The notes under the pieces were generated by a model that was given only the letters and a program-made list of their open reading frames with translations, was not told the origin of the DNA and did not search any database. Below are positions 29,219-64,000 of a stretch of 64,000 nt of DNA, one piece after another. Location of the stretch: positions 9,410,744 to 9,474,743 of the forward strand of contig NC_052170.1 of NCBI RefSeq assembly GCF_902713615.1, in the 5' to 3' direction. A program made the position numbers and the translations under genes. How positions within the stretch are numbered: the first letter of the stretch is position 1; every line of letters starts with the position of its first letter. The stretch comes from Scyliorhinus canicula (taxonomy: Eukaryota).

Positions 29219-31865
29219 AAGCGAAGTTAGGAAACACTTGTTCACACATGGGGCGGAGTCTCTGCCATTGGAAAGCGAGCTCAATTCATCATTTTAAATG
29301 TGAGATTTTTTTTCCAGCAGTAGTGGGGCCAAGGCAAGTCGCTGGAGTTAAGATTTAGATCAGCCATGATCTCCTTGAATGACAGAACAGGCTGGGAAGG
29401 CTGAATGGCCTCCTCTTGTTTCTATGACTCCTGCTGGGTGTATAGTTTCGTGGGCACCAGGTGCCTGGTCTCAAGTGAGCATTCTTCCTGTGTTGTGGCT
29501 GGACAATAGATATTGGCAATCGAGGTGACCCGGAGGCCTACTCTCACTAGAGGACAAGAACATTCTGCCTATTGTCCTATTACGCACCTCACCCCAACTT
29601 TCCTGGCCCATAGGCATTAAGGCCCATTGTAACACCCCTTCTTTCCAGCATGGCAGAGATTAATGATCTCGATCGAGGGGGGTCTTCCTGGTCTGTCTAG
29701 CTCAGTGCCTTATTGGGTAAACCAATTTTCCTGAAGAATATTGAAACAGGAGGAGGCCATTCAGCCCCTCGGGCCTGATCCTCACCATTGAATGAGCTCA
29801 TGGCTGATCTGTGACTGAACTCCATATACCCACCTTTGTCCCATTTCCTTTTGGGCGGCACGGTAGCACGGTGGTTGGCACTGTTGATTCACAGCGCTAG
29901 GGACCCGGGTTCGATTCCCGGCTTGGGTCACTGTCTGTGCGGAGTCTGCACATTCTCCCTGCGTGGGTTTCCTCCCACAAGTCCTGAAAGACGTGCTTGT
30001 TAGGTGGATTGGACATTCTGAATTCTCCCTCCGTGTAGCCGAACAGGCGCCGGAATGTGGCAACTAGGGGCTTTTCACAGTAACTTCATTGCAGTATTAA
30101 TGTAAGCCTACTTGTGACACTAATAAAGATTATTATTATTAATACCTTTTGTAGAAGTGCTGAGGGCAATGAGGGGGTTCCAATGACTGGCAAATTGATA
30201 AGGACAGTAGTTTATTGAGTCATCCGAGCAGCTCTTAAACACTTCTATTCAGCCCAGGCTCCGGAGAGAACTACCGCATTTCCGTCACCTGACCCTTTAG
30301 GGCCTGAGGGTCTGGTTTAGCACACTGGCCTAAATCGCTGGCTTTGAAAGCAGACCAAGGCAGGCCAGCAGCACGGTTCAATTCCCGTACCAGCCTCCCC
30401 GGACAGGCGGCGGAATGTGGAGACTAGGGGCTTTTCACAGTAACTTCATTGAAGCCTACTCGTGGCCATAAGCGATTTTCATTTCTCATTTTCGTTTCAT
30501 TTAAGTAGCCGCGTCATCACGTGACCACTTTAGTTCCAAAAAATTCTGTCAATCTCAGATTTACAATGAACAATTGGCACCAATATCCATTTGTGGAAGG
30601 GGTTGCAACGTACCACCCTCTCTGTGTAGGAATGTTTTTGAATTTCAATCCTGAAGGGTCTGACTCTAATTTTTAGGTCGTGTCCCCGAGCCCTCGACTC
30701 CTGAACATGGCAAGTGGCCCTTCGGCCCATGTTAGCCATTGACTAGAATCCTTACAGTGCAGAAGAAAGCTAGTTGGCCCATCGGGTCTACACCGACCCA
30801 CTGAAAGGGCACCCAATCAAGGCCCTCTCCCCTGCCCCATCTCCGTAACCCAGCCTAACCTGCATAGCCCTGGACACTAAGGGGCAATTTTAGGATGGCC
30901 AATCCACCTAACCTGCACATCTATCTAACCTCCACCTAACTGAACAGTGACTCGCTAGTCTGCTTCAGAGGGAAATTGAGAGTCAACCGCATTGCCCCTG
31001 GAACCACATGTAGGCCAGACCAGGCAAGGGTGGCAGATTTCTTCTTAAAAGGGAAAAAGTGAACACATTTATTTACCCAATTCATTTTTTACAATTAAGG
31101 GGCAATTAGCGTGGCCAATCCACCTACCCTGTACATCTTTGAGTTGTGGTGGTGAGACTCACGCAAACATTTTTTTTTTAGAAATTTAGAGTCGCCAATT
31201 ATTTTTCTCCAATTAAGGGGCAATTTAGCCTGGCCAATCCTCCTACCCTGCACATCTTTGGGTTGTGGGGGTGAAACCCACGCAGGCACGGGGAGAATGT
31301 GCAAACTCCACACGGACAGTGACCCAGGGCCGGGATTCGAACCCGGGTCCTCAGCGCCGTAGGCAGCGGTGCTAACCACTGTGCCACCGTGTTGCCCATA
31401 GACTCACGCAAACACGGGGAGAATGTGCAAACTCCACACGGACAGTGACCCGGGGCCGGGATCGAACCCGGGACCTCGACGCCGTGAGGCAGCAATGCTA
31501 ACCACTGCGTCACCGTGTTGCCCATAGACTCGCGCAATCACTTCCCCACCGTCACCAGACTCCTAAATTACCCTCTTATTTATTGACTGACCTCATTAAC
31601 ACTACAGCCTTATCACATGGCTTCCACTGATGCTAGTGCTTATGTCATTACATTGTATATCTTGTGTTGCCCTATTATGTATTTTCTTGTGTTTTCTTGA
31701 ATTGTGTTTAATTCCCTTTTCTTCCATATACTGAATGATCTGTTGAGCTGCTTGCAGAAAAATACTTTTCACTGTACCTCGGTACACGTGACAATAGACA
31801 AATCCAATCCAATTTTTAAAAAGCTGCTCAAAGTATTTTCCGGTCTGAACGTTTCAACAGAGGAA

Positions 31866-32074
31866 ATGTCAGGACGCCTGCTGGCGAGGCCCAAAGCCCC
31901 TCAGTCCAGCGACCCGAATTTAGCTCGGAGACTGAACGCGTTGTGGAAGTACCTGGACGCCACGGGGCTTCAGAGAAGCATGGAGGAGCTGTGCGTCGAG
32001 CTGCTGAACAGAGCAGAGCTGCCAAGCAACCCATACATGGGCTTTGTCCGTCGCCTCCAACAGCGGTCAGAACG
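31866..32074 (+). CDS. Uncharacterised protein, first coding exon seen (RIIa/Dpy-30-like docking motif)
   Basis: Acceptor TTTCAACAG|AG at 31860/31861, ATG 31866; MSGRLLARPKAPQSSDPNLARRLNALWKYLDATGLQRSMEELCVELLNRAELPSNPYMGFVRRLQQRSE; donor CG|GTAAGC, phase 2. Confidence 0.85.
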
Positions 32075-34565
32075 GTAAGCAGCAACAACAGCCTGCATTT
32101 GTGTAGCGCTCTTAATGCAGTAAAATGTCCCAAGATGCTTCACGGGAGCAATTATGAACCAAAATTTGATACCGAGCCGTGTAAAGATTGAGATATGAGA
32201 TTAATGTAGGGGCTGGTTTAGCTCACAAGGCTAAATCGCTGGCTTATAAAGCAGACCAAGCAGGCCAGCAGCACGGTTCAATTCCCGTACCAGCCTCCCC
32301 GGACAGGCGCCGGAATGTGGCGACTAGGGGCTTTTCACAGTAACAAGGGCAGCATGGTAGTATGGTGGTTAGCATAAATGCTTCACAGCTCCAGGGTCCC
32401 AGGTTCGATTCCCGGTTGGGTCACTGTCTGTGCGGAGTCTGCACGTCCTCCCCGTGTGTGCGTGGGTTTCCTCCGGGTGCTCCGGTTTCCTCCCACAGTC
32501 CAAAGATGTGCGGGTTATGTGGATTGGCCATGCTAAAATTGCCCGTAGTGTCCTAAAAAGTAAGGTTAAGGGGGGGGGGTTGTTGGGTTATGGGTATAGG
32601 GTGGATATGTGGGTTTGAGTAGGTTGATCATTGCTCGGCACAACATCGAGGGCCGAAGGGCCTGTTCTGTACTGTACTGTTCTATGTTCATTGAAGCCTA
32701 CTCGTGACAATAAGCGATTTTCATTTCATTTCATTTTTTTCATTTTTCATGTCATGGGAGTGTCTCTTTTAAGAAAGTTTTTTGCCTTATCACATGGCTT
32801 CAGTGATGTCATTTGGTGGGTGGAGCTGAGCTGTGGCTGTGAGATTTTCTTACTTTCACCTTCAGAGTTGACTGCTGTGGACTCGGGGAGAAAGAAGTGT
32901 TATGTTCCTTTCTTTCTATTTTCATTTTGAAGAGTTGTTCCAGGAAAAAAACTTGATTATAGCTACCTGCTTTAGTAACTTAAAAAATATAGTTTGCTTT
33001 GCAGAAGGGGTGAAACCTGCTGGTTAGACGGGGGCAGAATCTCTGGAAAAGCCAGTCTTATTCAAGTGAGAATGCGGAGTGCTGGGCCATGCCGTTGAAA
33101 AGGGGTTTTGGTTTATGGGATTTTGTTTTTGAATTGGAACAGTAAAAGGGGGAATTCATTAAGTGTTATACATAGATTACTGTAGCTGGGGGTGTATCTT
33201 TACATTTGTAATTGATAAAAAGTCTTGCTGTGTGTTTATAGAAATGTTAACTAAATTCTTAGAATATAGCTTGTTTTGATTAAAGTGTCCAGGAAGACAA
33301 TTGAATCACTCCTGAAGTGAAGGCTCTTGCGCTCATCCTAGTCAAATTCAACAATAATGTATAGGTCAGTGAACTCCATAATACATTTTTTAAACCCTGG
33401 GCCATAACAATTAGACATCCAAGAATTTGGTAAAAGAGATACTTTTCAATGGAGGACTTAATGGAGGAGAGAGAGAGAGAGAGAGTGGCGATGAGGTTTA
33501 AACTCAGGGACATAAAGAGCTTTGAGTCTAGGCAGCTGAAGACTCAGCCGCCAATGGTGGAGCAATGAAAATTGAGAACGTGCCGAAGGCCTGAACGGAA
33601 GGAGCACAGAGACCTCGGAGGGTTCTAGGGCTGGGGGAGACTACAGAGATAGAGAGGGGTGAGGCCTTGGAGGGTATTAAAGACAATGATGGGGATTTCA
33701 AAATTGAGGCATGGCTGGACTTTTGCTGCAGTGAACAAGGCCTATTAATATTAACCGGATCCACGCCAATTGGTGACATTAAAACTAAGATCTGGCTGTT
33801 TTCTTCGCCGGGGAGAGTTTATTGACTTAGTTCACAGTCAATACTGCTCCTACCCCAGTGTCCCAGCTATCCCCAATTATAGGTATACAAATAACCATCG
33901 CCTGTTAAACAATGCAATTGAAAATGAAAAATGAAAATGAAATGAAAATCGCTTATTGTCACAAGTAGGCTTCAAATGAAGTTACTGTGAAAAGCCCCTA
34001 GTCACCACATTCTGGCGCCTGTTCGGGGAGGCTGTTACGGGAATCGAACCGTGCTGCTGGCTTGCCTTGGTCTGCTTTCAAAGCCAACGATTTAGCCCAG
34101 TGAGCTAAACAACCCCTTAACAGTGTAATTAATAAGACATTGAAAACTGACTAAAAATGGGGTGCCTGGGTAAGTAAGAGCAAGACTACCTACAACTGCA
34201 ATTTGTTGAAATGTCTATTAAAAAAGATACTGTTGTATGTTATTGTTGATTAACAAGGGTTAGGGAAAGGATACTGGGGGACGGGGGGTGGGGTGGGGGG
34301 TGGGGGGGGTGGGGGGGTCAGTCGGATTGTGAGATTGAGGTTACAATCAGATCAGCCATGATCTCGTTGAATGGTGGAGTAGACTCGAGGGGCCGAGTGG
34401 CCTACTCCTGCTCCTGGTTCATATCGTATCTATACAGCATTCTGGAATCTTGTCAAAAGGCCAAATGGTTAACTCATGTCAATGGCTTTTGGGTTGTTGG
34501 TTTGTTCTAATAACTGCTGTACTACCACACACGGGTGTTACTATCTAAATACTTGTGCTCTCCAG

Positions 34566-34654
34566 GTTCCGTTTAATCAACTCCGTGCCAACTGAAAGAA
34601 TCCTTTCCGATCTCAACTTCCCGACATTTTCTACTGCTATCGGGTACATTTCAG
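34566..34654 (+). CDS. Uncharacterised protein, exon 2
   Basis: CTCTCCAG|G; (R)FRLINSVPTERILSDLNFPTFSTAIGYIS; CAG|GTACAG; phase 2 to 1. Confidence 0.8.
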
Positions 34655-36943
34655 GTACAGTAACTGAAAACAGATAGTCCTGACAAGATTGTTCTCACTG
34701 TGACACCATTCATACAACTTGCTGACACTTGGCCGCACTGCCATATACTGAATTGCACACTCAGCCAAGGTGGGGAGGTTTTCTGTTGACTGTGACATTG
34801 CGGGTAATGCCACTGGTCTGGTACTCCAGAGACCCAGGCTACCCCTCTGGGGCACACGGGTTCAATTCCCACCATGGCAGCTGGTGGAACCTAAATTCAG
34901 TGAATAAAATCTGCAATTGTAAAGCGAGTCTCGGTAATGGCGACCACGACAACTATCAGCGATTGTCGTAAAAACCCACCTGGTTCACTAATGTCCTTTA
35001 GGGGAGGAAATCTACTGCCCTCACCCGGTCTGGCCGACATGTGACTGTAGACCCACAGCAACGTGGTTGACCCTCAGCTGAAATAGCCCAGCAAGTCACC
35101 TTTGAAATTTGGCAATCTTGCGTCTGACCTGATTGGTGCAAGACAAAAAGCTTTGACAGGGTGTCCCAATTAGGGCAGTTAGGGATGGGCCACCAATGCT
35201 GGCCCAGCTGGCGACGCCCACATCCCACGGAATAGGTTTTTTAAAAAACGCACTTGAATTCCTCATCTCCTGAGTTCTGTCAAATGGAATACTAGAGGAT
35301 GATGTACAGTGGTCTATCATTTTTAGTTAACTCATTATTGCTCATTTCGCATCAACGGGCCTTAGTTAAAATGACTCCTGGTGATTGTGTTGGAAAATAT
35401 ACATCTGATTCCATCCTCTCTCTGCTAACATTCTAACGTCTAAGATCTTCCCGCACATAGAGAGGGCATTTGGGTAAGGCACCGATGGAATCTGTGAACG
35501 AGTCAGTGCCTTCAGGAGGGGGTGGAGTGGACGATGGGGTGGTGGGAGGGGGATGGCAAATGGGTCTTTTTCTTTTTCAATCGGTTCGCCATTGGAATCG
35601 AACTGAACTACACTCAAGAGCGCACTGTTCAACTGGCGAAGCAGGAAACAATGATGAGTAGAGCCCCTCGATTTCTCATATCGTTTTTTGAGTTTGCAGG
35701 CTAATTGATAAAGATTGCTTGCTGTGATTCGTTAACAAATCTATGTTCGTACAACCAAAGGACTTTGCATCACAGAAGGAGGCCATTCGGCCCATTATAA
35801 CTCTTTGCAGGGACCCGTGTCCCTGCTCTTTCTCCATAACTCTGCAATTTTCTCCCCTTCAAATATTTACTCATTTCCCTTTCGAACATCGCTGTTGAAT
35901 CTGCTTCTTCTGTTCTTTCAGGCAGTGCTGTCCCAGTCACAAAGGCTCACGGCAAAAAAACTTCTCATCTCCCGCTTTCCTCTTTTGCCAAATTACCGTA
36001 AATCTGTTGTCCTCATTATATCACACCTTCATACCAGCTCGGCTGACAGAAAGCAACTTATATTGACCTCCAAAATTATTTCTCACGGTATGGGCGTCAC
36101 TGGCTAGGCCAGCATTTATTGTCCATCCCTAATTGCCCCTTGAGAAGGTGGTGGTGAACCACTTTCTTACACCACTGCAGTCCATATGGTGTAGGTACGC
36201 ACATTGTGCAATTAGGGAGGGAGTTCCAAATGTTTTTTTAAATATAAATTTAGAGTACCCAATTCATTATTTCCAATTAAGGGGCAATTTAGTGTGGCCA
36301 ATTCACCATCCTGCACATTTTTGGGTTGTGGGGGTGAAATCCACGCAATCATGGGGAGAATGTGCAAACTCCACACAGACAGTGACCCAGGGCCGGGATC
36401 GAACCTGGGACCTCGGCGCCGTGAGGCTTCAGGGCTAACCTACTGCACCACCCTGCTGACCCTGGGAGTTCCAAATGTTGACCCAGCAACAGCGAAGCAG
36501 TGGCCAATATATTTCCAAGTCAGCATGGCGTGTGGCCTGGAGGGCAATTTGCAGGTGGTGGGGTTCCCATGCGTCTGCTGCCCTTGTCCTTCTAGAAGAT
36601 GGAAGGTTTTACATCTGACAATTCCTCGGTTGCTATTGTCTCAAACTCCAGCACAGGGCATGTGATCTCAGGGAATGTGGTTGCAACGGACAGGCTGGCG
36701 TCAACCAGCCAGGTTTGAATTTAAGCAAAAGCTTGGCAATTAACTGCTCCCTGCTGCATTCTCCATGGCAACATCTCTACCAATCACTTGCAAAACCAAT
36801 CGGCACTCTCTTCCCTTGCAATATAAATTGTTGCTCCCTTTACTGTTGGTAACCTTGCGATCTGCCTTGACGAGTGCTTACACAGCACGCCTCTTTTTCT
36901 CAGCCACTTCAAGTTTATTTTCTCTTCTCATTTGAATTTGCAG

Positions 36944-37083
36944 GTTCCACCGCCTCTTCCCACGTGTGGGGCCTGCCCAGCGTCCTGCGCTGTGTCTCTC
37001 CAGTTCATGTCAAACAGTACAGCTGGCTTCTGGATAGTGTTACACCTCCCCTTGCTACTCTACATCACACAAGCGCTTGCACA
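36944..37083 (+). CDS. Uncharacterised protein, exon 3
   Basis: TTTGCAG|GT; (G)STASSHVWGLPSVLRCVSPVHVKQYSWLLDSVTPPLATLHHTSACT; ACA|GTGAGT; phase 1 to 0. Confidence 0.85.
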
Positions 37084-37149
37084 GTGAGTCTTATTTTTTC
37101 CCTCTCAGAAGACCCCGCAGTCCTGTTCCATCACGATTCAGAGTCGGCT

Positions 37150-37560
37150 GTGGATCAGCGGCTCGCACTCTTGTCTCTAAGCCCACTCCAGAAACTCGAG
37201 CATAAACATCAACACCAACAAATGCAGTTAAGGAGGGACTACTGCACTCTCTGAGGTGCTTTCTTTCAGATAATACATTAAACCAAGGCCTTCTCCGCTT
37301 AATTAGCGGGTGAATGTAAAAGTACTCGAGGGTTATTTAAAATTCTGAGCAGGGGAGATCTTCCTGGTCAATAGCATCTCACCGTCCAGCATCAATTCCC
37401 TCTAACAGCATCACAAAGACAGATCGTCCGCTCGTTATCATATTGTTGTTCGTGGAATCTTGCTATATACCTGCTGGAATTCCTACATTGCAAGAGTGTG
37501 TGTTCCAAAATACTTAATTGGTGTGAAACTTTGGGATGTCCTGGGGGTTGAGAAATGTAG
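37150..37560 (+). mobile_element. Deu-domain SINE, degraded
   Basis: AGCCCACTCCAGAAACTCGAGCA...GAGGGACTACTGCACT...ATTAAACCAAGGCC...CCTACATTGCAA...AATTGGTGTGAAACTTTGGGATGTCCTG follows Deu-SINE motif order. Confidence 0.7.
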
Positions 37561-49678: not shown

Positions 49679-49860
49679 GATGAAGTGATGAATCAAGGCA
49701 AAGCCTTCTTCACCAGCGTCCTGGCTGCCGTCTCGGAAAAGCAGCTCATTCGACTCGAGTGTCTATGGCGACTGAATGTCGCTGGTGGCGACTTCCACAG
49801 GGGGGCGAAGCTGTACAGCCTGAGTGTGGTCCAGGCATCTGAGGCTATTGGAAGTGAGAG
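49679..49860 (+). CDS. Uncharacterised protein, exon 6
   Basis: TTTTTCAG|GAT; DEVMNQGKAFFTSVLAAVSEKQLIRLECLWRLNVAGGDFHRGAKLYSLSVVQASEAIGSE; AG|GTAAAG; phase 0 to 2. Confidence 0.85.
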
Positions 49861-50302
49861 GTAAAGGACACGGGTGTGCGGCCTGCCATCTAAGGCATTG
49901 GCGGGTTCTACAGAGCTGTCAGCAAGCCAACATTCCTTTCACTGTGGTTAGCACTGCTGCCTCACAGCACCAGGGTCCCGGGTTCGTTTCCCGGCTTGGG
50001 TCACTGTCTGTGCGGAGTCTGCACATTCTCCCTGTGTCCACGTGGGTTTCCTCCGGGTGCTCCGGTTTCCTCCCGCAGTCCAAAGATGTGCAGGCCAGGT
50101 GGATTGGCCATGATAAATTCCCCTTCAGGTAAGCCGCGGGGAGGACACAAAGAGGTGCGGACAGGTTAACTGAGTGGGCAACAAGATGTTAGGTGGAATA
50201 TAACGTGGACAAGCGTGAAGTTATTCACGTTACTCTTAAGCAGAACATTTTTTAAAGGTGTGAAACTCCTATGTATTAATGTTCAAAGGGACTTGAGATA
50301 AG

Positions 50303-50573
50303 TGTGGTAGTATCACTAGGGGTATTACGGTACCTGGGAATGTGAGCTGTCATTGGTGCAGAGGGCTCGCTGCCCATTGGCCCAAGTATCGTGTTCTCCG
50401 TATTCCTATTGGCTAAGAGGAAGGTAGCTCCACCTACGAGGCGGGGTATAAGAACCCATGTTCCCCAGCAGCCAGGGCATTTCCTGTACGTCTGCAGCCG
50501 GGCTCACTTCTTGCTGATTAAAGCCTTTCGTTTCGGACTTCATCTACGTTTCGTGTCCATTGATTGTGCATCA
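50303..50573 (+). mobile_element. Solo LTR
   Basis: TGTGGT...CATCA termini, 5-bp TSD ATAAG, internal TATAA and ATTAAA. Confidence 0.85.
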
Positions 50574-52264
50574 ATAAGGAATGCAGTAAGTTAGCATGCA
50601 AGTGCAGAAGGCCATTAGGAAGGCAAATGGAATCATAGAATCCCTACTGTGCAGAAGGAGGCCATTCGGCCCATTGAGCTTGCACCAACCCTCTGAACGA
50701 GTGCCCTGCCTAGGCCCACGCCCCTACCCTATGCCCGTAACCCCACCTAACCTGCACATCTTGGAACACTAAGGGGCAATTTAGTATCGTCAATCCACCT
50801 AACCCTCAAGATGGCACAGTGGTTAACACTGCTGCCTCACAGCGGCAGGGACCCGGGTTCGATTTTGGCCTTGTGTGACTGTGCGGAGTATGCACGTTCT
50901 CCCCATGACTGCGTGGATTTCCTCCGGGCGCTCCAGTTTCCTCCCACAGTCCAAAGATGCACAGGTTAGGTGGATTGGCAGTACTAAATTGCCCTTTAGT
51001 TTCCAAAAGGTTAGGTGTGGCTATGGGTTACAGGGATGGGGGGGGAGGGGGGGGGGGGGGAGGGGGGGGGAGGGGGGGGGAATGGACTTAGGTGGGGTGC
51101 TCTTTCAGAGGGTCTGTTTCGACTCAATGGGCCAAATGTCCTTCTTCTGCGCTGTTGGAACTCTATGACCTGTGATCCTTGGACTGGTGGAGGAAACCGG
51201 AGCACCCGGAGGAAACCCACGCAGACGCGGGGGAGAACGTGCAAACTCCACACAATCACCCAAGGCTGGAATTGAACCCGGTTCCCTGGCGCTGTGAGGC
51301 AGCAGTGCTAACCACAGTGAAAGGAATGTTGGCTTTATTCCAAGGGGATTGGAGCACAAGAAAGAAGGCTTGCTGCATGGTATTGTGTTTTGGTGAGACC
51401 ATGTCTGGAATACCGTGTTCAGTTTTGGTCTCCATGTTTAAGAAAAGATATACTCGCATCGAAGGAGGTGGCAAGGAAGATTTGCTAAAAGGTCCCTGGG
51501 ATGAGGGGGTCAACCTATAATCAGAGGCTGACTAAATTGGGCTTACATTCTCTGGAATTTATTATTAATAATACTGATAATAATCTTTGTTATTGTCACA
51601 AGTAGGCTTACATTAACACTGCAATGAAGTTATTGTGAAAAGCCCCTAGTCGCCACACTCCGGCGCCTGTTCGGGTACACAGAGGGAGAATTCAGAATGT
51701 CCAATTCACCTACCAAGCACGTCTTTCGGCACTTGTGGGAGGAAACCGGAGCACCCGGAGGAAACCCACGCAGACACGGGGAGAACGTGCAGACTCCGCA
51801 CAGTCAGTGACCCAAGCCGGGAATCGGACCAGTGACCCTGGCGCTGTGAAGCAGCAGTGCTAACCGCTGTGCTACCATGTTTAGAATAAAGATCTCATTA
51901 AAACCTTCAGAATTCTGCAGGGGTTTGAGATGGTAGGCACTGAGAGGTTGTTTGCGCTGGCCAGAGAATCCAAAACACAGGGTGGGGTTGTAGGTGCTCT
52001 GTAGCCGAATACATTTAAGGCTTTGTATTGAATGGCGGAGCAGGCTCGATGGGCCGAATGGTCTACTCCTGCTCCTAGCTCTCGTGTCCTTGTGCAAGTT
52101 CTTCAATATATTTGAGATAGGATTATGCAGAGATGCTGAATTAAAATGTGGTTTTGACTAAAGTCAAAGGTGAACCTATGCAAGTAAAAACGGAAAATGG
52201 TGACATAGGTTCCTCCACTCCCCAACAAAACACCGATCTCTCATTCCTTTTCCTCCCTCTGCAG

Positions 52265-52419
52265 GATTTTTGATTTCTCCGAACATCCACTAATCCATCT
52301 GTATTCCAGCGTCTTCCTCCAACGGACCCATGCGGAAGCCTATTACCGGATATTTATCCTGAGAGAGCAGGCGACTGATAAAGACTTGCAACAGCCACGG
52401 ACCCGAGCCACTTATCAAT
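52265..52419 (+). CDS. Uncharacterised protein, exon 7
   Basis: CTCTGCAG|G; (R)IFDFSEHPLIHLYSSVFLQRTHAEAYYRIFILREQATDKDLQQPRTRATYQ; donor T|GTAGGT, phase 2 to 1. Confidence 0.85.
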
Positions 52420-52584
52420 GTAGGTATTGCACAGGGTCAAAATATAATTGTCACTGGCGGCACGGCGGCGCAGCCGTTAGCCCTGCTGCCTCACGGCACC
52501 GAGGTCCCGGGTTCGCACCCGGTCCCGGGTCACTGTCCGTGTGGAGTTTGCACATTCTCCCCGTGTCTGCGTGGGTCTCACCCC

Positions 52585-53056
52585 TGTGGTGATATGCATC
52601 ACTGTAGATACACAAGGGGTTAATGTAAGTACATGTAGACTAGCTAGACACTAGAGGGAGCACCAGAGACATGACACACAGACACTCAACCAATAGGTCA
52701 GTAAGATAGGACACGACCAATGGGCATTCACGATACACACAGAGGTGACACTACCACAGGGGGGGCATTACACCAACCCATATATAAAGGACACAGCGCA
52801 GATGATCTTCCTCTTTCCGGTGGAGACACTTAGTGAGTACAGACACAGGGTTGATTCAACATCACACCCACCACGTGGATTGTAGCAGACTGGTTCGTCA
52901 GTCTGAGTAGCTATAGAAGGATTAACAGTAGTGGCAAACCCGAGTAGGAGAATTGTAAATAGTTTAATAAACGTGTTGAAGTTATCTCCCCGTCTGAACC
53001 TTCCTTTGTCAGAGTGAACATCAAGGAAGCAGCTTTGCCAAGAGCAGAACAAGACA
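52585..53056 (+). mobile_element. Solo LTR inserted into a SINE
   Basis: TG...CA, 5-bp TSD ACCCC, TATATAAA and AATAAA; splits the SINE at 52457-53150. Confidence 0.85.
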
Positions 53057-55706
53057 ACCCCCACGACCCAAAGATGTGCAGGCTAGGTGGATTGGCCAAG
53101 CTAAATTGCCCCTTAATAAGAAAAATAAATTGGGTACTTTAAATTTAAAAAAATATATAATTGTATCATGTGAACCTCCCTACAAAAGGTTGCTCAGTGT
53201 CCTGTCTGGGTCTGTGCTGACCCTAACTCTCTCCCAACGTTATTTAGTCTAATCCTGCACCCCACACCTATTGAATATTTTCAATTTGCACCACCACAGA
53301 ATTAAAACCTGGAACGAAAAGTTTAATGGTGTCCATGAAACCATTGTCGATTGTCGTAAAAACCCATCTGGTTCACTAATGTCCTTCAGGGAAGGAAATC
53401 TGCTGTCCTTACCCTGTCTGGCCTGTAGGGGGCTCCAGAGCCATTGCAATGTGGTTGACCCTTAAATGTCCTCTGAAATGTCCCAGCGAGCCATTCAATT
53501 TAAGGACAATTATGGACTGGTTTGGTCAGTGACGCCCACATTCCACCCATAGAATCCATAGAGTCGGGCGGCACATGGCGCAGTGGTTAGCTCTGGGACT
53601 GCGGTACGGAGGATCCAGGTTCGAATCCAGGCCCTGGGTCACTGTCCGTGTCTGCGTGGGTCTCATCCCCACAACCCAAAGATGTGCAGGTCAGGTGCGT
53701 TGGCCACACTAAATTGCCCCTTAATTGGAAAAAGAAAAGAATTGGGCATTCTAAATTTATTTATTTTTTAAATCTAGAATCCATAGAGTGCAGAAGGAGG
53801 CCATTTGGCCCATCGAGTCTGCAACGGCCCTCCGAAAGAGCACCCTACCTAGGCCCACTCCACTGCCCTACCCCACCTTAACCTGCACAACTTTGGACAC
53901 TAAGGGGCAATTTAGTGTGGTCGATCCACCTAACCTGCGCAGCTTTTGGACTGTGGGAGGAAACCCACTCAGACACGGGGAGAACGTGTAAACTCCACAC
54001 AGACAGTGACCCGAGGCCGGAATCGAACCCGAGACCCTGGCGCTGTGAGACAGCCGTGCTAACCACTTGTGGCACCCCAATGAATGAGTTTTTAAAAATC
54101 CAGGAGCTAGCGTTGGCAGTATTAGGCACCAGAACTTTAATGTGTTCATTTAACAGAGGGAACATAAGTAGTAGGAGAAGGAGTTAATTAGGATCATTAA
54201 GGTAATGGTTGATCTTCCGCCTCAACTCCACTTTCCCACACTGATCCCATATCCACTGATTTCTCTCCTCTCCTAAATCTATCCATTTCAGAGTTGAATA
54301 CACTCAACGACTTGGTACCCACAGCCCTCCGGACTAGAGAGTTCCAAGGTTCTGAGTGCAAGAAATGTATCCTCATCGCAAGAGGCTTGTGAATCTTCCA
54401 AATTCTTTAACCCAGAGGGCTGGTGTTCCTCAGTCACAAATGCTGGTGAAGGATCTGGGTGTCCTTGTACAGGAAGTGCGGACAGCTGACATCATAGTAC
54501 GGCAAGCCATTAGGAAGGCAAATTGCTACGGCGCTGAGGACCTGGGTTCGAATCCCGGCTCTGGGTCACTGTCCGTGTGGAGTTTGCCCATTCTCCCCGT
54601 GTCTGCGTGGGTTTCGCCCCCACAATCCAAAAGATGTGCAGGATAGGCGGATTGGCCACGCTAAATTGCCCCTTAATTGGAAAAAATAATTAGGTACTCT
54701 AAATTTATTTTTTAAAAAGAAAAAAAAAGGAAGGCAAATAGAATGTTAGCCTGTATTGCAAGGGGATGAGAATACGAGAGTAAAGGAAATCTTGTACAGG
54801 GTTTTAGTGAGACGTCACCTGGAACATTGTGTACAGTTTGGTTTTCATACCTCAGGTAGGACACATCTTGTTTGTTCTTTCTCAGGATTTGGGCCTCGCT
54901 GGCTAGGCCCAGCATTTATTGCCCTTCCCTAATTGCCCATGAGAGGGCGGCAGTGAGCTGCCTTCTTGAACCGCTGCCATCCATGTGGAGTACATGTGAG
55001 CAAGAAGCAAGAGCAGAAATCCGGACCCTCGAGCAAGCTCTGCCATTTCATAAGATCTCGGCTGATCACGGAGTCACCTCATATCTGCATCCCACCTTCC
55101 CCCCCCCCCAGTAACCTTCCACCCCCTCGCTTGCCAAGAATCTATCCATCTCTGCCTTCAAAATATTCAAATAATAATAATATTCGCATCCACCCTGTCA
55201 ATCTCCTCAGGATCTTGTACGTTTCAATCAAGTCTCTTACTCTCCTAAACTCTAGTGGGTGCGATCCTAACCTTTTGCTTTATAAATTTAGAGTACCCAA
55301 TTCATTTTTTCAATTGAGGGGCAATTTAGCCTGGCCAATCCACCTACCCTGCACATCTTTGGGTTGTGGGGTAGAAACCCACGCAAACACTGGGAGAATG
55401 TGCAAACTCCACACGGACAGTGACCCAGAGCTGGGATCGAACCCGGGACCTCGGCGCTGTGAGGCAGCAGTGCTACCCACTGCGCCGCCGTGCTGCCCAA
55501 GGGTACAATGTTAACCTGTTCAGCGGAGACCATGATGGGGGAGGAGACCGGGAAAGTGGGGGGAGAGATGCAGAGGGGGCGGGGGTCGACCGGGTTGGAG
55601 GAGACTGGAAGGTTGGGGTTGGGAGCGGTGCGGGAGGGTCAGGGTGGGAGGTGGTTGGGTCGGGGGTCGGGAATGGGTGTGGTGTGGGGGATCTGCTGGG
55701 GGAGGG

Positions 55707-55708
<2 letters not shown>

Positions 55709-55743
<35 letters not shown>
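55709..55743. repeat. (GT)n microsatellite
   Basis: About 17 perfect GT units. Confidence 0.95.
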
Positions 55744-55745
<2 letters not shown>

Positions 55746-57598
55746 CGCGTGCGCGTGCATGTCCCGTGTCAGACTGGCCCTGGGTGTTTAAACTGTTACT
55801 CTCGAGTCAGAAGTGATTTTTTCAGGGCAGCATGTGGCGCAGTGGTTAGCACTGGGACTGCGGCGCTGAGGACCCGGGTTCGAATCCCGGCCCTGGGTCA
55901 CTGTCTGTGTGGAGTTTGCACATTCTCCCCATGTCTGCGTGGGTTTCACCCCCACAACCCAAAGATGTGCAGGTTAGGTGGATTGGCCACGCTAAATTGC
56001 CACTTAATTGGAAAAAAATAATTGGCTACTCTAAATTTATAAAAAAAAAAGAAGTGATTTTTTCTTTCCCCTCTAACTCTTTCAGAGTAACAATCAGGGT
56101 AAAATGGCAGCACCATCTGAAGTTTGCAATTTAAACCCCGTCTGTCGGATGGTTCACAGCCCAGTGCAATTGTTCAGAGGAAATTAGCACTTCTGAGCAA
56201 TTGCCAGGTAAACCGTTACGTGGTAACTTCCTGGAGAGATTCCCCTGCGCGTTATTGGGGTATCTCCTAAATGCGACGCTGTGGAACGGAAGTTATGAGC
56301 CAATAGGCTTCACTTCTATTCTTTCTGCCAAAATGGATAATATCAAATTTTCCCACATTATACCCCACTTACCAGATCTTTGCCCACTCACTTAACCCTA
56401 TCTATGTTGCTTTTGTAGCCTCCTTATGTCCTCTTCACAACTTACGTTCCTACCTATCTTTGTGTCATCGGCAAATTTAACAAGCCTACCTTTAATCCCT
56501 TCATCCAGGTCATTTATATAAATTGCAAACAATTGAGATTCCAGCGCTGATCCCTTTGGCACATTACTTGTTACATTTTGTGAACCTGGAAAATCCCCAT
56601 TTATGTCTGCTCTCCGCTTCCTGTTAGCTCGCCAATCTTCTATTCATATTACCCCCGATAATATGATCTTTTATTTTCTGCAATAACCTCTTGCGTGGCA
56701 TTTCATCAAAGTGTTGATACACCCCAAGTGCTGTTTTGTATGAAAGATGGGGAAACAAGTGTATGTTTGGGCTGCTTCTTAGGACGAGAGGGTGTACTAG
56801 GAGGAGAGATTGTGTAGAATGAGTCTATATCGCCTGGAGTTGAGAAGAATGAGGATAATCTAATTGAAGCATATAAAATTCGGACAGGGCTTGACCGGAT
56901 AAATGCTGAGAGAAGGGACCCGGTCTCTATTCCGGCGTCTGTGCAGAGTCTGCACGTTCTCCCCGTGTCTGCCTGGGTTTCCTCCGGGTGCTCCGGTTTC
57001 TTCCCACAGTCCAAAGATGTGAAGGTTAGGTGGATTGGCCGTGTTAAATTGCCCCTTAATGTACAACAGGTTTGGTGGGTTTCCGGGGTTACAGGGATAA
57101 GGTGGAGGCGTGGGTTTAAGTAAGGTGCTCTTTCCAAGGGACGGTGCAGACTCGATGGGCCGAATGGCCTCCTTCTTCACTGTCAATTGTATCTATGCTG
57201 GGGAGTCTAAAATTGGGTTATAATCTCCGGGTAAGACTGAGATAAGGATACATTTTGTGAGTCTTTGGAATTCTCTGTGCTCAGAATAACACTGAGATTG
57301 ATAGAAGTTTGGATGCGAAGGAAATCAAGGGCTTTGAGGAATAGGTAGAAAATCAACTATGATCTTATTGAATGGTGGAGCAGACTCCTGCCCCGATTTC
57401 TTATGCATGGTATCATTATCATTCCTCGCTGTTATACTTTGTCAATCGTTCTATTTCCTAGCTGCTTAGAGTCACCATACAGCCAGAATGATGATGACTG
57501 TCCACTTTCCCATCAATCGCACTTGGAGATTGCACTTTGACCTACAGGGCAGAGTCAATGTTCACTTGGTTTGTCAGTTGTGTTTTCTGTGCCAATAG

Positions 57599-57891
57599 TT
57601 CGGGGTGACGGACGGACGAGCAGGGTCGCCGTGAAAAGCATTTCGCCCCCTCCCAAGGCGCCGCTCCAGGGGTTTCAGTACGCAGTGCGAGGCGATGACA
57701 CTCCAGACGCCAGCTCCATCCTGGAGCCTGTCAGGGGGAGCATGATGCAGAGAATTGCCCGCACCCCCTTGATGACGGGAGCATTCAACATCACTTACCT
57801 CTCCGTACTGATCATCCTCACGGAGCTGGGAAATGCTGGGAATCAGGAAGGCGAGCCTCAGATGACAGACACAGATCGAGGCCAACAGGAG
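57599..57891 (+). CDS. Uncharacterised protein, exon 8
   Basis: CCAATAG|TT; (F)RGDGRTSRVAVKSISPPPKAPLQGFQYAVRGDDTPDASSILEPVRGSMMQRIARTPLMTGAFNITYLSVLIILTELGNAGNQEGEPQMTDTDRGQQE; GAG|GTAAGA; phase 1 to 0. Confidence 0.8.
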
Positions 57892-58124
57892 GTAAGAGGC
57901 AGTCGATGGGATGACCCGCTCCCCGGTATTTGTCGAAACGAAAAGGGGACATGTGCATTTATTTCACAGCCTCAAGAAATTCCAAAGTGTCTCACAGCCA
58001 ACAAAATAGGTTTTGAAGTGTAATCGCTGTTGTAACATAAGAAATGTGGCAGCCATCTGACCAGATCGTCTGCTGTTCAGTAATGTTGGTCAGGTGAGAG
58101 ATTGGCTGGGCCAATCGCAGTCGG

Positions 58125-58740
58125 TGATCGGGCGGAGAATCCTAAGGCCGGAATCGGGGGCGGTGCCTGTTTGATGCCCCCTCTGACACGGCGTCACCGC
58201 GGCGCACTCTGCAGGCCACTTGGACGACCTTCACGCGTCACCTGAAGGCCCGCCCCTGATGCTCCGCCCCCGATGCTCCGCCCCCGATGCTCCGCCCCGA
58301 TGCCCCGCCCCCGATGCTCCGCCCCCGATGGGCCCAGTTCCCGACCGCGCGGTTGACGTGTGGTCTCAACGTTCGGGGACCTGGCACGGCGGCTGCGGAC
58401 TGTGTCCAGCACCATCACAGTCGGGGGGGGGGGGGGGTGCTGCCGCCTGGGGGGGGGGCTTCCATGAGGGCTGGGGGGACTGGTCGGGGGTGGCCAGGGT
58501 CAGGGGGGCACAATCTGGCAGGCTGGATCCCTGCACGGCCGGTGCCATGTTGTAAGGCGTGACCGCTGCAGGTCGTCGCTGTGGGTATGCGCGGCCACGG
58601 ACTCGGCAATTCTCCGGCTGTTTATATCGTGGAAGCCGGGGGTTTTATGCAGGATCGGTGCGGAGGCAGTGCCAAATGTTTTTCACGTAAAACAACACAA
58701 TTCCTCCGCACTTAGCCTCAGAAACGGAGAATCCAGCCCC
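58125..58740. repeat. GC/CpG-rich interspersed repeat (probable MITE family)
   Basis: Ends GGAGAATCCAGCCC like the GC-rich element ending GGAGAATCCCGCC at 42462; internal (CCCCGATGCTCCG)n repeats. Confidence 0.5.
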
Positions 58741-58817
58741 ACGTATTGTTACCAGAATGAATCAAACTCATTTAGATTCAGCGGCTATCGCCCATGTGTC
58801 GTTCCTATATTCCCCAG

Positions 58818-58925
58818 GCTTTGGTGCAACTTCACAGGTTCTTGCATGGCTCCGGCTGTCAAATGTGGAACATCTTAAACCTCATCGAAACCATCTGCAA
58901 GCTCCTGGAATCTGACGACATAGAG
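58818..58925 (+). CDS. Uncharacterised protein, exon 9
   Basis: TTCCCCAG|GCT; ALVQLHRFLHGSGCQMWNILNLIETICKLLESDDIE; GAG|GTAAAG; phase 0 to 0. Confidence 0.85.
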
Positions 58926-59479
58926 GTAAAGGCACTTACAATGTTAATTTAATAGAACATCAGATCACAGCAGCCAAGTCGCTGAGTGTCTTTAAAACAG
59001 AGATAGATAGGTTCTTAATCAGTAATGGGATCAGGGGTTATGGGGAGAAGTCGGGAGGATGGGGATGAGAAACATATCAGCCATGATTTAATGGCGGAGC
59101 AGATTCAATGGGCCGAATAGCCTCATTCTGCTTCTATATCTTATGGTCTTATGTTCTTTCCAGATGCACTGATGGAATTGATGCAATGCCTTTTCTGTGC
59201 CTTTTTGATTTCCCCCCCTCCTGAAGTCACTGATTGTTACTGGGTGCAGTTGCAAGGTTGGATACAGTTCCCACTTCCACAACTTCACTCAATGAGTTAT
59301 ATTTTCATTTGGGACCCTTGACATTGGGTATTGAGCAGCAACCTCATCACAGGGGACAACCAAAATCAGCCATGACTGATCCTCAGTAGACATCCCGCCG
59401 CATTTCGTATAGATCTGTAGCCATATCAAAGCCTCGGGAGTGAGTAGGGTAGTTACCATTTCTGGATTCTCCAGCATCA

Positions 59480-60270
59480 ACATGCTGGTGGTCACCATGG
59501 ATCAGAAACTGAACTGGACTAGCCTTATGGATACTGTGGCTACACAAGCAGCCACAGGTCAGAGTCTAGGAATCCTGTGGTGAGTAACTCACCTCCTGAC
59601 ACCCCGACGCCTGTCCACTATCTGCAAGGCACAAGTCAGGAGTGCGATGGAATACTCCCCACGCACCTGGATGAGTGCAGCTCCAACAACACTCGAGAGG
59701 CTTCGCACTTCGCACAATCCACAGCAAAGCCGCCAACTTGATTGGCATTGTTCCACAAACATCCACTTCCTCCCTCCTCCACCACTGACGCACAGTGGCG
59801 GCCGTGTGTACCATCTACAAGATGCAGGCAGAAGCTCAGCAAGGCACCTTCCAAACCCACAATCACGACCATCTCGATGGACAAGGGCAGCAGATACCTT
59901 GGACCACACTTGATCAGCTCTGCTGGTCGGGCCACATCGACCCAATGCCTGGCATGAGGCTCCCGAAACAGGTGCTCTACTCAGACCTCCAAGATGGCAG
60001 GCGAGCCGCAGGTGGGCTGCGGACACACTTCAAGGGCACCCTCAAAGCTCCCTTGCAAAAGTGCAACATCTCCACCGAAGACCGGGGAATCCCTGGTTCA
60101 AGGCCATCCAGCCAGGGGGTTGTGGGGGGGGAGGTCGTCGGCAGTGAAGGGACCGCATGGCAACCCTGGTTCCCCCACCCACCCGTTCCTCCAACCACCG
60201 TCTGCCCGCCTGTGACAGGGACTGGAGGTTGTGCACTGGACTCTGCAATCTTCTTTGATTATGCTGACTT
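59480..60270 (+). mobile_element. Adjacent degraded LINE fragments (CR1/L2-like followed by RTE-like)
   Basis: AAGGCACAAGTCAGGAGTGCGATGGAATACTC (KAQVRS.MEY motif), then WSGHI..MPGMRLPKQVLYSDLQDGRR..GG....FKGTLKA (RTE signature). Confidence 0.65.
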
Positions 60271-61155
60271 TGAATCTTGATGTGGTAATGTTAACAAAGA
60301 ACATCAGACTTTGTTTTACAACAAAACTATTTATTACTAACACTACTCTAAAGGATTACTATAATGTCTAAGATTAATACAGTTGGAAATAATGGTCTAA
60401 CACTAACTTGCACTAAGATACTGCAAAGCTATTCTTGTATGCGACTGCTAGGAACTCCTCACTAACACCTTGTCCTGGAACACATGGTGCGTCCGGGTCA
60501 CGTGCCTGCATATTGCACCACCTGCTGGTCGGATGCTAGAACAATAAAACATATAACTTATGATGCACATACAGATGATGATGATCTGCTCTTATTAAAT
60601 ACAGATGATAGTCTACCTATCACCACAGACTCCTCAGTCTCGGCCAAGGTGGACAGCCTAAGGAGATAACCCTGTGAGTCCTTTGTCAATCAAGAATCTA
60701 TCAGACACAGGGCGGCAGGGTGGCGCAGTGGGTTAGCATAGCTGTCTCACGGCACTGAAGACCCAGGTTCCATCCCGGGCCAGGTCACTGTCCGTGTGGA
60801 GTTTGCACATTCTCCCCGTGTTTGCATGGGCTTTGCCCCCACAACCCAAAGATGTACAGGGTAGGTGGATTGGCCAGGCTAAATTGCCCCTTAATTGGAA
60901 AAAATGAATTGGGTACTCTAAATTTATTTTTAATAATCTATCAACTACAGCCTCTTAAACTCCTGGTTTGATTGTGTGAAAGGCGCGATATCAGTGAAAG
61001 TGGTTCGTGCTGAGAAACAGAACAGAATAATTAACTTAATCCCAGATTCTCCACCGTTGGGAGCAGCTCTCACTGAGACGGTGTGTAAATTGGGCCTTTG
61101 ACTTTGGTAAATCACTCGCCTTGCGTACAATTGATGGTACATCACACTGTTCCAG

Positions 61156-61350
61156 GTCCAACGTGGCGAGATCTATCCAATCCTGGCTGGAAAAATCCAC
61201 AAACTGATTTCGGATTTTCTGAGATTCGATTATCGGACCGTCTCGTCTGATTTCGTGATTCTCAGCAAAGCTTTGAGGAAGGGGTTGGAGTTGGCATTGG
61301 ACGGTTTATCTGAAAAACCCCACAGCAAACTACTGGACCAGTTCAGAAAG
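61156..61350 (+). CDS. Uncharacterised protein, exon 10 (gene continues beyond the window)
   Basis: TGTTCCAG|GTC; VQRGEIYPILAGKIHKLISDFLRFDYRTVSSDFVILSKALRKGLELALDGLSEKPHSKLLDQFRK; AAG|GTAGGC; phase 0 to 0. Confidence 0.85.
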
Positions 61351-61550
61351 GTAGGCAGAGTTAAAGTGATACGGTTGCCAAGCGATTACACCGCCCTTGC
61401 TTCTCACGGGCGTCCGGCTGTACTTGCAAAGGACGCTAACTATTTACCATCACCTTAGGCACCGCTTAAACCACGTTAAGCGTGGAGGCTGCCACATGCC
61501 CTTCTATTGCTCTCGAGTTTTAAATCACTGATTTCAGTCACAGTCATGTC

Positions 61551-61935
61551 TGAAGTGTTGGCTAGTGTAGACTTGAGAGATGAACAGACACTTCCAACAC
61601 TGACGAAGGCTCAACTCAATTTTATTAACTACTTCTAACTAACTAACACACGATGACTGTGGGTCTAAATGATGCTAACTTAAACTAGAGACCTAAGCCT
61701 TGTCCGAACCAGTTGATTCTCTCAGCACGTGGTGTGAGTCTGTGCTGGGCTGGATGAGTTCTTGTTACACTCAGAGGCAGCACCCAGAATGAGCGGGAAC
61801 CATGGTGCCCTCTGCCTTTATAGTGGGTGTATTCTAACTGGTGATTGGCTGCGGTGTTTGTACATGTTGATTGGTCCCTGTGTGTGTCCATCAGTGTGTG
61901 TCTGCACCATGTATATTATGGTGTATATTATGACA
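61551..61935 (-). mobile_element. Solo LTR, same family as 44408-45616
   Basis: TG...CA termini, 5-bp TSD ATGTC (61546-61550 and 61936-61940). Confidence 0.9.
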
Positions 61936-63758: not shown

Positions 63759-64000
63759 GTCTAAACTGTACATCTTTGGACACTAAGGGGCAATTTAGCG
63801 CGGCCAATCCACCTAACCCGCACATCTTTGGACTTGTGGGAGGGAACCGGAGCATCCGGAGGAAACACACGCTGACAATGGGAGACCGTGCAGACTTCGC
63901 AAAGACAGTCACCCGCGGCTGGAATCGGATCCGGGTTCCCTGGCGCTATGAGGCGGCAGTGCTAACCACTGTGCCACCATGCCGCCCGTCAGGCATTTTC

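What the first reader, a model, noticed from the sequence alone, without database searches (positions are those of the whole stretch)
31866..61350. Unrecognised multi-exon gene (at least 536 aa) with an N-terminal RIIa/Dpy-30-like docking motif, divergent from CDKN2D
Seen: ten exons with canonical AG/GT ends and mutually compatible phases (2,1,0,2,0,2,1,0,0,0) join into a stop-free frame of 1608-1614 nt across 29.5 kb of repeat-filled introns, which is very unlikely by chance; the ORF track shows only pieces. Residues about 27-64 (WKYLDATGLQRSMEELCVELLNRAELPSNPYMGFVRRL) fit the YL...l...l..l...ll...P.nP..f...l pattern of dimerisation/docking domains (PKA RII, DPY30, ROPN1/SPA17, EFCAB10), which bind AKAP-type helices and are common in axonemal proteins. 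The rest (alpha/beta region, low-complexity linker, helical region) matches nothing I recognise, and I know of no such gene beside human CDKN2D. Inference: an ancient, possibly cilia- or sperm-related scaffold lost from some vertebrates. This is the best candidate for new biology in the window.
Basis: partly seen in the sequence, partly recalled or inferred. Interest (0 to 1): 0.8.

Follow-up and report, generated by a model that had tools for sequence, protein, structure and literature searches.

The report
Shark gene for double nucleotidyltransferase-fold protein
The ten exons are the real, intact first half of a conserved but unstudied animal gene, and its protein is predicted to be two tandem copies of an enzyme-like (nucleotidyltransferase) fold best known from giant viruses, not a cilia-type docking protein.

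Summary
Observation confirmed. They join into 1614 nt / 538 codons without a stop. The product is 82.9% identical, gaplessly, to residues 1-538 of Mustelus asterias 'uncharacterized protein LOC144507598'. The gene runs on past the window end; complete-looking orthologues in other species have about 1080-1280 aa.

The family is annotated but uncharacterised, with no Pfam, NCBIfam, PADLOC, PHROG or PDB sequence match. It was found in sharks, rays, sturgeon, paddlefish, bichir, gar, eels, a salamander, amphioxus, a hemichordate, molluscs and a brachiopod. No orthologue appeared among reviewed UniProt structures.

The RIIa/Dpy-30 reading is not supported: 0 of 27 motif sequences hit either Pfam model, and motif profiles find no DPY30 or PKA-RII chain. 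The motif opens a roughly 300-aa unit that occurs twice in the protein (hhalign 99.5%, E 2.9e-22).

The parts
31866..32074 (+). Exon 1 (aa 1-69, phase 2): start codon and most of the N-terminal helical motif
   Evidence: ATG and GT donor seen directly. 87% identical to Mustelus P0001 residues 1-69.
31914..32074 (+). It is the first element of module 1.
   Evidence: Y29, P53, N55, P56 and Y57 are invariant. Homologous to a second copy at about aa 615-680 of orthologues (97.9%, E 5.8e-13). No RIIa or Dpy-30 hit.
34566..34654 (+). Exon 2 (aa 70-99)
   Evidence: tblastn and junction search. 97% identical to Mustelus.
36944..37083 (+). Exon 3 (aa 100-146), carrying the invariant VWGLPS stretch
38900..39093 (+). 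Exon 4 (aa 147-210), carrying the invariant residues G155, F159, D197 and H207
45998..46046 (+). Exon 5, a 49-nt small exon (aa 211-227)
   Evidence: Acceptor tttcag|A and donor AAG|gtgagt read directly. Restores the ...HAVF-R-LLVP... match to orthologues.
49679..49860 (+). Exon 6 (aa 228-287), carrying the invariant G269 and K271
52265..52419 (+). Exon 7 (aa 288-339): end of the alpha/beta core (invariant F305, E312, Y314) and start of the disordered linker
57599..57891 (+). Exon 8 (aa 340-437): low-confidence linker, then the first helices of the helical lobe
   Evidence: pLDDT is below 50 for residues 322-377 of the model. Least conserved exon, 69% identical to Mustelus.
58818..58925 (+). 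Exon 9 (aa 438-473), helical lobe
61156..61350 (+). Exon 10 (aa 474-538), helical lobe. It ends in phase 0 at a GT donor, and the gene continues beyond the window.
   Evidence: No later exon in 61351-64000.
34594..52361 (+). Genomic span of the nucleotidyltransferase-like alpha/beta core of module 1 (aa about 80-320, exons 2-7)

Best explanation
Shown: the window holds the 5' half (ten exons, 538 codons) of an intact protein-coding gene under clear constraint. It belongs to an uncharacterised bilaterian family in which complete-looking models have about 1080-1280 residues.

Shown by profile comparison and structure prediction: the protein is an internal tandem duplication. Each module has four parts. 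First comes a short helical arm bearing the invariant LPxNPY(P) turn. Second is an alpha/beta core of the polymerase-beta-like nucleotidyltransferase type. Third is a flexible linker. Fourth is a helical bundle lobe. The window encodes module 1. The closest solved structure for both modules is the Megavirus chilensis Mg662 nucleotidyltransferase, which was crystallised with GTP.

Inferred: In the models, the region from about residue 67-70 (the end of the helix after the NPY turn, and the short helix that follows) aligns, together with three C-lobe helices, to whole four-helix bundles.

Inferred: neither module keeps the canonical acidic triad of active nucleotidyltransferases. The protein therefore most likely works as a soluble two-lobed pseudo-enzyme. 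It would bind a nucleotide or nucleic-acid ligand, or a partner protein, in the cleft of each module, as other catalytically dead members of this fold do. It would not work as a polymerase or as an AKAP-type docking scaffold.
For: Gene: (colinear exons, canonical sites, 82.9% identity over 538 aa, all in-window invariant residues kept). Exonic 31-mers of exons 1 and 8 occur in several runs guessed to be RNA, both of the same species and of two related species.

Family. There is no hit in any family library.

Duplication: the motif copies are homologous at hhalign 97.9%, E 5.8e-13. The halves 23-318 and 617-905 align at 99.5%, E 2.9e-22 over 284 columns.

No acidic triad: the only conserved acids in module 1 lie in helices or loops (E69, D197, E287, E312). 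Module 2 has one conserved acid in a core strand, E767.
Against: The fold rests on AlphaFold models built from shallow alignments of 17-20 sequences, and identity to Mg662 is only 6-9%. No sequence method links the family to any nucleotidyltransferase. I could not read model coordinates, so I could not check whether the conserved polar residues (T133, T146, G155, T160, T162, D197, H207, K271, E312) line the nucleotide cleft. I also could not compare them with the catalytic residues of Mg662, so a non-canonical active site is not excluded. In a chiton and in amphioxus the module-2 strand reads E-L-D-E-H and E-L-H-E-H, which could be a remnant or a variant metal site.
Confidence: 0.62

Rival explanations
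1. The N-terminal 40-50 residues form an RIIa/Dpy-30-type dimerisation and docking domain that binds AKAP-like amphipathic helices, making the protein a cilia- or sperm-related scaffold.
For: The pattern Y-L-D-x-T, helix, P-x-N-P, helix is really present and invariant at Y29, P53, N55, P56 and Y57. To my knowledge it resembles the YLD...PPNP...F layout of DPY30; this is recalled, not tested. The model shows a helix-turn-helix around the NPY turn.
Against: There was no PF02197 or PF05186 hit for exon 1 or for any of 27 motif sequences at E <= 10. Motif profiles hit no DPY30 or RII chain in the PDB. The motif recurs at about residue 620 as part of a roughly 300-aa duplicated unit. Fold matches to two unnamed AlphaFold DB proteins begin at residues 18-24, so the arm belongs to the conserved module. 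From about residue 67-70 the chain aligns with C-lobe helices to whole four-helix bundles. There are no expression data.
Confidence: 0.08
2. An active, non-canonical nucleotidyltransferase, for example a ligand-activated synthase of a nucleotide signal in the manner of OAS2/OAS3 or cGAS-like receptors. Module 1 would be a regulatory pseudo-domain and module 2 the catalytic one.
For: The tandem architecture resembles OAS2/OAS3 and Utp22/NOL6, which are the weak top hits in reviewed AlphaFold models. OAS1 and cGAS match module 2 at Foldseek probability 0.93-0.97. Mg662 binds GTP, according to the PDB title. There is a conserved glycine loop after the first core strand and a nearly invariant E767 in the next strand of module 2. 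The patchy, loss-prone distribution is typical of immune genes (established knowledge).
Against: No [DE]-h-[DE] pair and no third carboxylate is conserved in either module. TM-scores to OAS and cGAS are low at 0.1-0.27. There is no Mab-21, OAS or CD-NTase profile hit in Pfam or PADLOC.
Confidence: 0.2
3. The gene is silent or decaying in this species: an unexpressed relic whose frame is still open.
For: No protein from this genome appeared in the protein searches. RNA-run holdings are partial, with shares of 0.10-0.30. A repeat lies within about 55 nt upstream of the ATG.
Against: There are 538 codons without a stop or frameshift across ten exons. All splice sites are canonical. All 23 in-window invariant residues are kept. 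Exonic words are present in runs guessed to be RNA.
Confidence: 0.05

Closest known systems
Megavirus chilensis Mg662 nucleotidyltransferase (PDB 4AMQ, 4AMS, 4XUL) and the 'L544-like nucleotidyltransferase' proteins of giant viruses and virophages
   Different: Identity is only 6-9% and no sequence-profile link was found. The animal protein has two modules in one chain, an extra N-terminal LPxNPY helical arm on each module, and a disordered insert of about 55 residues between the lobes. The catalytic acids are not conserved. The function of Mg662 itself is barely described, and I found no paper on it.
OAS2/OAS3, and other tandem or inactive nucleotidyltransferase-fold proteins (Utp22/NOL6, OASL, Mab21-like)
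   Same: These also show tandem repetition of a core-plus-helical-lobe unit, with at least one degenerate copy. They are weak but recurrent fold hits: OAS2 E 1.4e-3, OAS1 probability 0.96-0.97.
   Different: TM-scores are low. There is no Pfam OAS or Mab-21 match. No double-stranded RNA-binding or catalytic motif could be identified. Mg662 is a much closer match than any OAS or cGAS chain.
RIIa / Dpy-30 dimerisation-docking domains (PF02197, PF05186)
   Same: A short helix-turn-helix with a hydrophobic heptad pattern and a P-x-N-P turn. The resemblance is by pattern only.
   Different: No profile match was found. The motif is embedded in, and duplicated with, a roughly 300-aa module. In the models the region just after it aligns with the C-lobe helices.
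Annotated orthologues: 'uncharacterized protein LOC144507598' (Mustelus asterias), LOC122552236 (Chiloscyllium plagiosum), LOC127584859 (Pristis pectinata), LOC120540497 (Polypterus senegalus) and others
   Same: The same gene: 74-83% identical in sharks and colinear with the window's exons.
   Different: None has a name, a domain or a described function. The Mustelus model appears to end in a transposon-derived tail.

Membership tests
RIIa (PF02197) / Dpy-30 (PF05186) docking domains | Significant match to the family's profile HMM | tested here: not met
   Exon 1 gave 0 families at E <= 10. The 14 N-terminal and 13 internal motif sequences gave no RIIa or Dpy-30 hit. HMMER filters may hide very weak matches.
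RIIa (PF02197) / Dpy-30 (PF05186) docking domains | Sequence relationship to solved D/D domains (DPY30, PKA RI/RII) | tested here: not met
   Profiles A2 and A3 against all PDB sequences at E <= 10 gave no DPY30 or PKA regulatory-subunit chain.
RIIa (PF02197) / Dpy-30 (PF05186) docking domains | Free-standing helix-turn-helix that homodimerises into an X-type four-helix bundle and binds an amphipathic helix | not testable with these tools
   Only monomer models could be made. In them the region after the NPY turn aligns with C-lobe helices (model ranges 67-557 and 70-554 match whole four-helix bundles), which argues against a free domain.
Polymerase-beta-like nucleotidyltransferase fold (L544/Mg662-like) | Alpha/beta core plus helical lobe superposable on a solved member | tested here: met
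Polymerase-beta-like nucleotidyltransferase fold (L544/Mg662-like) | hG[GS] loop after the first core strand | tested here: inconclusive
   In module 1, the invariant G155 is followed by S, P or Q directly after strand 146-154. Invertebrate module 2 has a comparable (I/V)(S/T)G-x-(S/T) stretch. The position was judged from secondary structure only.
Polymerase-beta-like nucleotidyltransferase fold (L544/Mg662-like) | Three conserved carboxylates: [DE]h[DE]h on one strand and h[DE]h on a neighbouring strand | tested here: not met
   No conserved acid lies in any core strand of module 1. Module 2 has only E767 in a core strand.
Polymerase-beta-like nucleotidyltransferase fold (L544/Mg662-like) | Sequence-family membership (Pfam, NCBIfam) | tested here: not met
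   No family was found for any full-length member. Module profiles against PDB sequences found nothing.
OAS / cGAS / Mab21 (cGLR) nucleotidyltransferases | Mab-21, OAS1_C or CD-NTase profile match, and close structural match | tested here: not met
   No Pfam or PADLOC hit. The fold hits have TM 0.1-0.27 only, and no OAS or cGAS chain appears among the 50 listed VIA rows.
TPR repeats (TPR_10 / TPR_12) | Pfam TPR match in family members | tested here: not met
   Exon 1 gave weak multi-stretch phmmer hits to TPR-rich proteins (their TPRs are shown), and Atlas features pointed the same way. No family member matches any TPR model.

The most novel reading that the evidence does not exclude
Animals as far apart as molluscs and sharks keep a two-module relative of the giant-virus and virophage L544/Mg662 nucleotidyltransferases. 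It works as a ligand-activated enzyme or sensor in nucleotide signalling or antiviral defence, a parallel to OAS2/3 and the cGAS-like receptors, and it was lost in amniotes and most teleosts.
Probability: 0.15. Interest if true: 0.8.

Novelty: new variant of a known kind. Interest (0 to 1): 0.55.

Why it matters
This family is among the remaining large, well-conserved animal protein families that have no domain assignment, no name and, as far as I could find, no literature. Recognising it as a tandem nucleotidyltransferase-fold protein gives it a testable biochemical identity: nucleotide or nucleic-acid binding, and possible catalysis.

The closest structural relatives are in giant viruses, virophages and bacteria. 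That raises two questions: about the origin of the module, and about a possible lost branch of nucleotide-based signalling or defence in vertebrates. The family appears to be absent from mammals, so sharks, sturgeons, bichirs, eels and salamanders are the vertebrate systems in which to study it.

The case also shows that a short pattern match, here to Dpy-30/RIIa, can mislead when the motif is part of a larger repeated module.

Tried and rejected
- **RNA-seq junction check.** There is therefore no read-level evidence for splicing.
- **dN/dS.** The look-up of encoding contigs returned no DNA for the Mustelus, S. torazame or Chiloscyllium genes because the files were too large. Constraint was judged from protein conservation only.
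- **Word-index protein searches.** These saturated at 8000 candidates and returned few members, so the taxonomic range is a lower bound.
- **Atlas feature search.** With exon 1 it gave only TPR-like leads below 0.9. With the full protein it gave generic large helical scaffolds such as NCKAP1, CYFIP and Gemin4, also below 0.9. Both were rejected as uninformative.
- **TPR reading of the motif.** Rejected because no family member hits a TPR model.
- **Sequence libraries.** PADLOC, PHROGs and NCBIfam gave nothing.
- **Literature.** Searches for Mg662, L544 and this gene found nothing usable. One paper lists Mimivirus L544 among 'transcription regulators' without giving evidence.
- **Later exons.** A search for further exons in 61351-64000 found none.
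Full report
**1. The observation**

Exon 1 starts at the ATG at 31866 and ends before a GTAAG donor at 32075. Its 69-residue translation has no Pfam match. A phmmer search of 1.84 billion representative proteins found 23 proteins. The best is a 995-aa protein, 87% identical over residues 1-69. This is XP_078090879.1, 'uncharacterized protein LOC144507598' of Mustelus asterias.

tblastn of that protein on the window gave ten colinear + strand matches covering residues 1-539. Refining each junction by frame continuity and similarity, and reading the small fifth exon directly, gives these exons:

| Exon | Coordinates |
|---|---|
| 1 | 31866-32074 |
| 2 | 34566-34654 |
| 3 | 36944-37083 |
| 4 | 38900-39093 |
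| 5 | 45998-46046 |
| 6 | 49679-49860 |
| 7 | 52265-52419 |
| 8 | 57599-57891 |
| 9 | 58818-58925 |
| 10 | 61156-61350 |

- Every acceptor is AG and every donor GT.
- The joined frame is 1614 nt = 538 codons with no stop.
- The product aligns without gaps to the Mustelus protein at 82.9% identity.
- Identity is 77.7% to Heterodontus, 73.9% to Chiloscyllium, 36-40% to paddlefish and salamander, and 25-33% to amphioxus, hemichordate, mollusc and brachiopod proteins.
- Of the alignment columns invariant across 17 family members, all 23 that fall inside the window are kept, as are 32 of 33 near-invariant ones.

No later exon lies in 61351-64000. The window therefore holds roughly the first half of a gene whose complete-looking orthologues in other species have about 1080-1280 residues.

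**2. Surroundings**

On the minus strand, 11480-11851 matches p19INK4d in one stretch at E 4e-33. An upstream ORF at 16457-16900 carries the likely first coding exon. The neighbour is therefore a CDKN2D-type gene, head-to-head with this gene, with about 15 kb between the start codons.

The introns are full of dispersed repeats. Intron 5 holds a 33-bp minisatellite of about 80 copies. In Chiloscyllium the gene spans 57 kb and is followed by an acyl-CoA dehydrogenase gene. Earlier notes of this scan call the genome the small-spotted catshark; I did not test that.

**3. Expression**

Sampled 31-mers of exon 1 and exon 8 occur in Logan contig sets of runs guessed to be RNA. In the same species the shares are 0.29, 0.10 and 0.30. 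Two related species show 0.14-0.30. Some runs of unknown kind reach 0.87-1.00. This is compatible with low-level transcription but does not show splicing. Junction support is therefore missing.

**4. The family**

Members carry only names such as 'uncharacterized protein' or 'hypothetical protein'. They were found in these groups:

- Sharks and rays: Mustelus, Chiloscyllium, Heterodontus, Scyliorhinus torazame, Pristis, Hypanus, Leucoraja
- Non-teleost ray-finned fishes: Acipenser, Polyodon, Polypterus, Erpetoichthys, Lepisosteus
- Eels: Conger, Synaphobranchus
- A salamander: Pleurodeles
- Invertebrates: Branchiostoma, Ptychodera, Lottia, Liolophura, Lingula

None of the full-length members has a Pfam domain, nor a PADLOC, PHROG or NCBIfam match. 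A Foldseek search of reviewed UniProt models with the full-length model found no orthologue, only weak matches at E >= 1e-3. This supports loss in mammals. The true taxonomic range is a lower bound, because the word-index searches saturated.

**5. The 'docking motif'**

Five results argue against a free RIIa/Dpy-30 domain:

- No RIIa or Dpy-30 Pfam match was obtained for exon 1 or for any of 27 motif sequences, even at E <= 10.
- Profiles of the motif find no DPY30 or PKA-RII chain among all PDB sequences.
- The same motif recurs near residue 620-680 of the full protein, and the two copies are homologous (hhalign 97.9%, E 5.8e-13).
- The homology extends far beyond the motif. Residues 23-318 align with 617-905 at 99.5% probability, E 2.9e-22, over 284 columns. 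The motif is thus the opening element of a roughly 300-residue unit that was duplicated in tandem.
- In the AlphaFold models, helices 17-33 and 35-47 are followed by the NPY turn and a helix at 58-75. Several complete four-helix-bundle structures align to model ranges such as 67-557 and 70-554. This implies that the region from about residue 67-70 packs with three helices of the C-terminal lobe.

Fold matches to two unnamed AlphaFold DB proteins also begin at residues 18-24, so the arm belongs to the conserved module. The weak phmmer hits of exon 1 to TPR-rich proteins are best read as generic helical-hairpin similarity.

**6. The fold**

The full-length Chiloscyllium model has pLDDT 73 and pTM 0.53. 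The model of Mustelus residues 1-577, the closest orthologue of the window's product, has pLDDT 79 and pTM 0.78.

- AlphaFold DB clusters give a family member (Lingula, E 9.5e-29) and two unnamed proteins (E about 1e-14).
- Further AlphaFold DB cluster hits are a protein named 'Pyrrolo-quinoline quinone repeat domain-containing protein' (E 9.5e-9) and models named 'L544-like nucleotidyltransferase domain-containing protein' and 'Nucleotidyltransferase'.
- BFVD gives giant-virus and virophage proteins at probability 1.00.
- The ESM Atlas gives bacterial hypothetical proteins of about 440 aa at TM 0.50-0.66.
- OAS1/2/3, cGAS-like receptors, ITPRIPL2 and Utp22/NOL6 appear only as weak matches.

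I conclude that each module is a two-lobed nucleotidyltransferase-fold unit of the L544/Mg662 type. The protein is a tandem of two such units, an arrangement reminiscent of OAS2.

**7. Is it an enzyme?**

Active members of this fold carry two carboxylates on one core strand and a third on a neighbouring strand (established knowledge of the polymerase-beta-like superfamily). I mapped conservation onto the predicted secondary structure.

- Module 1, the part encoded here, has no conserved acid in any core strand. Its conserved polar residues are T133, T146, G155, T160, T162, D197, H207, K271, E287, H310 and E312.
- Module 2 has one conserved acid in a core strand, E767.
- A glycine loop follows the first core strand in both modules. 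This fits the hG[GS] position, but that is not proof.

I therefore favour a catalytically inactive, ligand- or partner-binding protein. This step is inference. I could not inspect coordinates or compare with the active site of Mg662. Some invertebrate module-2 strands (E-L-D-E-H, E-L-H-E-H) could represent a variant metal site.

**8. Comparison and novelty**

The gene is not new as an annotation, since LOC entries exist in other sharks. It is uncharacterised, has no domain model, and I found no literature on it or on its closest structural relative. The fold is a known kind. The tandem, probably degenerate, animal form with the LPxNPY arm is a new variant.

The docking-domain mechanism is not supported, and the cilia/sperm idea is untested.

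**9. Verdict**

| Claim | Confidence |
|---|---|
| Real, intact, conserved gene | about 0.97 |
| Tandem L544/Mg662-like nucleotidyltransferase fold | about 0.8 |
| Pseudo-enzyme or scaffold mechanism | about 0.5 |
| Docking domain | about 0.08 |

Interest is moderate at 0.55. It would rise sharply if nucleotide signalling or a defence role were shown.

Noticed in passing
window 46335-48982: A 33-bp minisatellite of about 80.5 copies, 92% matching, fills much of intron 5. It produces long spurious ORFs on both strands (739 aa, 545 aa).
   Followed up: partly
window 11477-11851 (-) and 16457-16900 (-): A two-exon CDKN2D-type INK4 gene. Exon 2 matches p19INK4d at E 4e-33, and the start codon lies near 16684.
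   Followed up: partly
window 5840-6439 (-) and 17743-18836 (-): Reverse-transcriptase ORFs of a LINE. Residues about 923-970 of the Mustelus protein model P0001 match these repeats, and orthologues cover only 91% of it. The annotated C-terminus of the Mustelus protein therefore looks like a transposon-derived model artefact.
   Followed up: partly
window, many sites (e.g. 32362-32556, 37536-37820, 44685-44953, 49996-50169): A short dispersed repeat whose translation reads ...GSIPG.GHC.CGVCTFSPC... recurs in both orientations throughout the introns. It is probably a SINE.
   Followed up: no
window 31729-31811: A repeat copy, also present at about 39200-39290 on the other strand, lies about 55 nt upstream of the gene's start codon. 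The promoter and 5' UTR are therefore unclear.
   Followed up: no
protein P0008 (MetaClust, 1689 aa): This Lingula-like family member contains duplicated blocks of its own sequence relative to P0015. This is probably an assembly or gene-model artefact.
   Followed up: no
Chiloscyllium locus of P0037 (no DNA served): The orthologue spans 57 kb and is followed 4.6 kb downstream by an acyl-CoA dehydrogenase gene. This is a possible synteny anchor for dating the gene's loss in other vertebrates.
   Followed up: no
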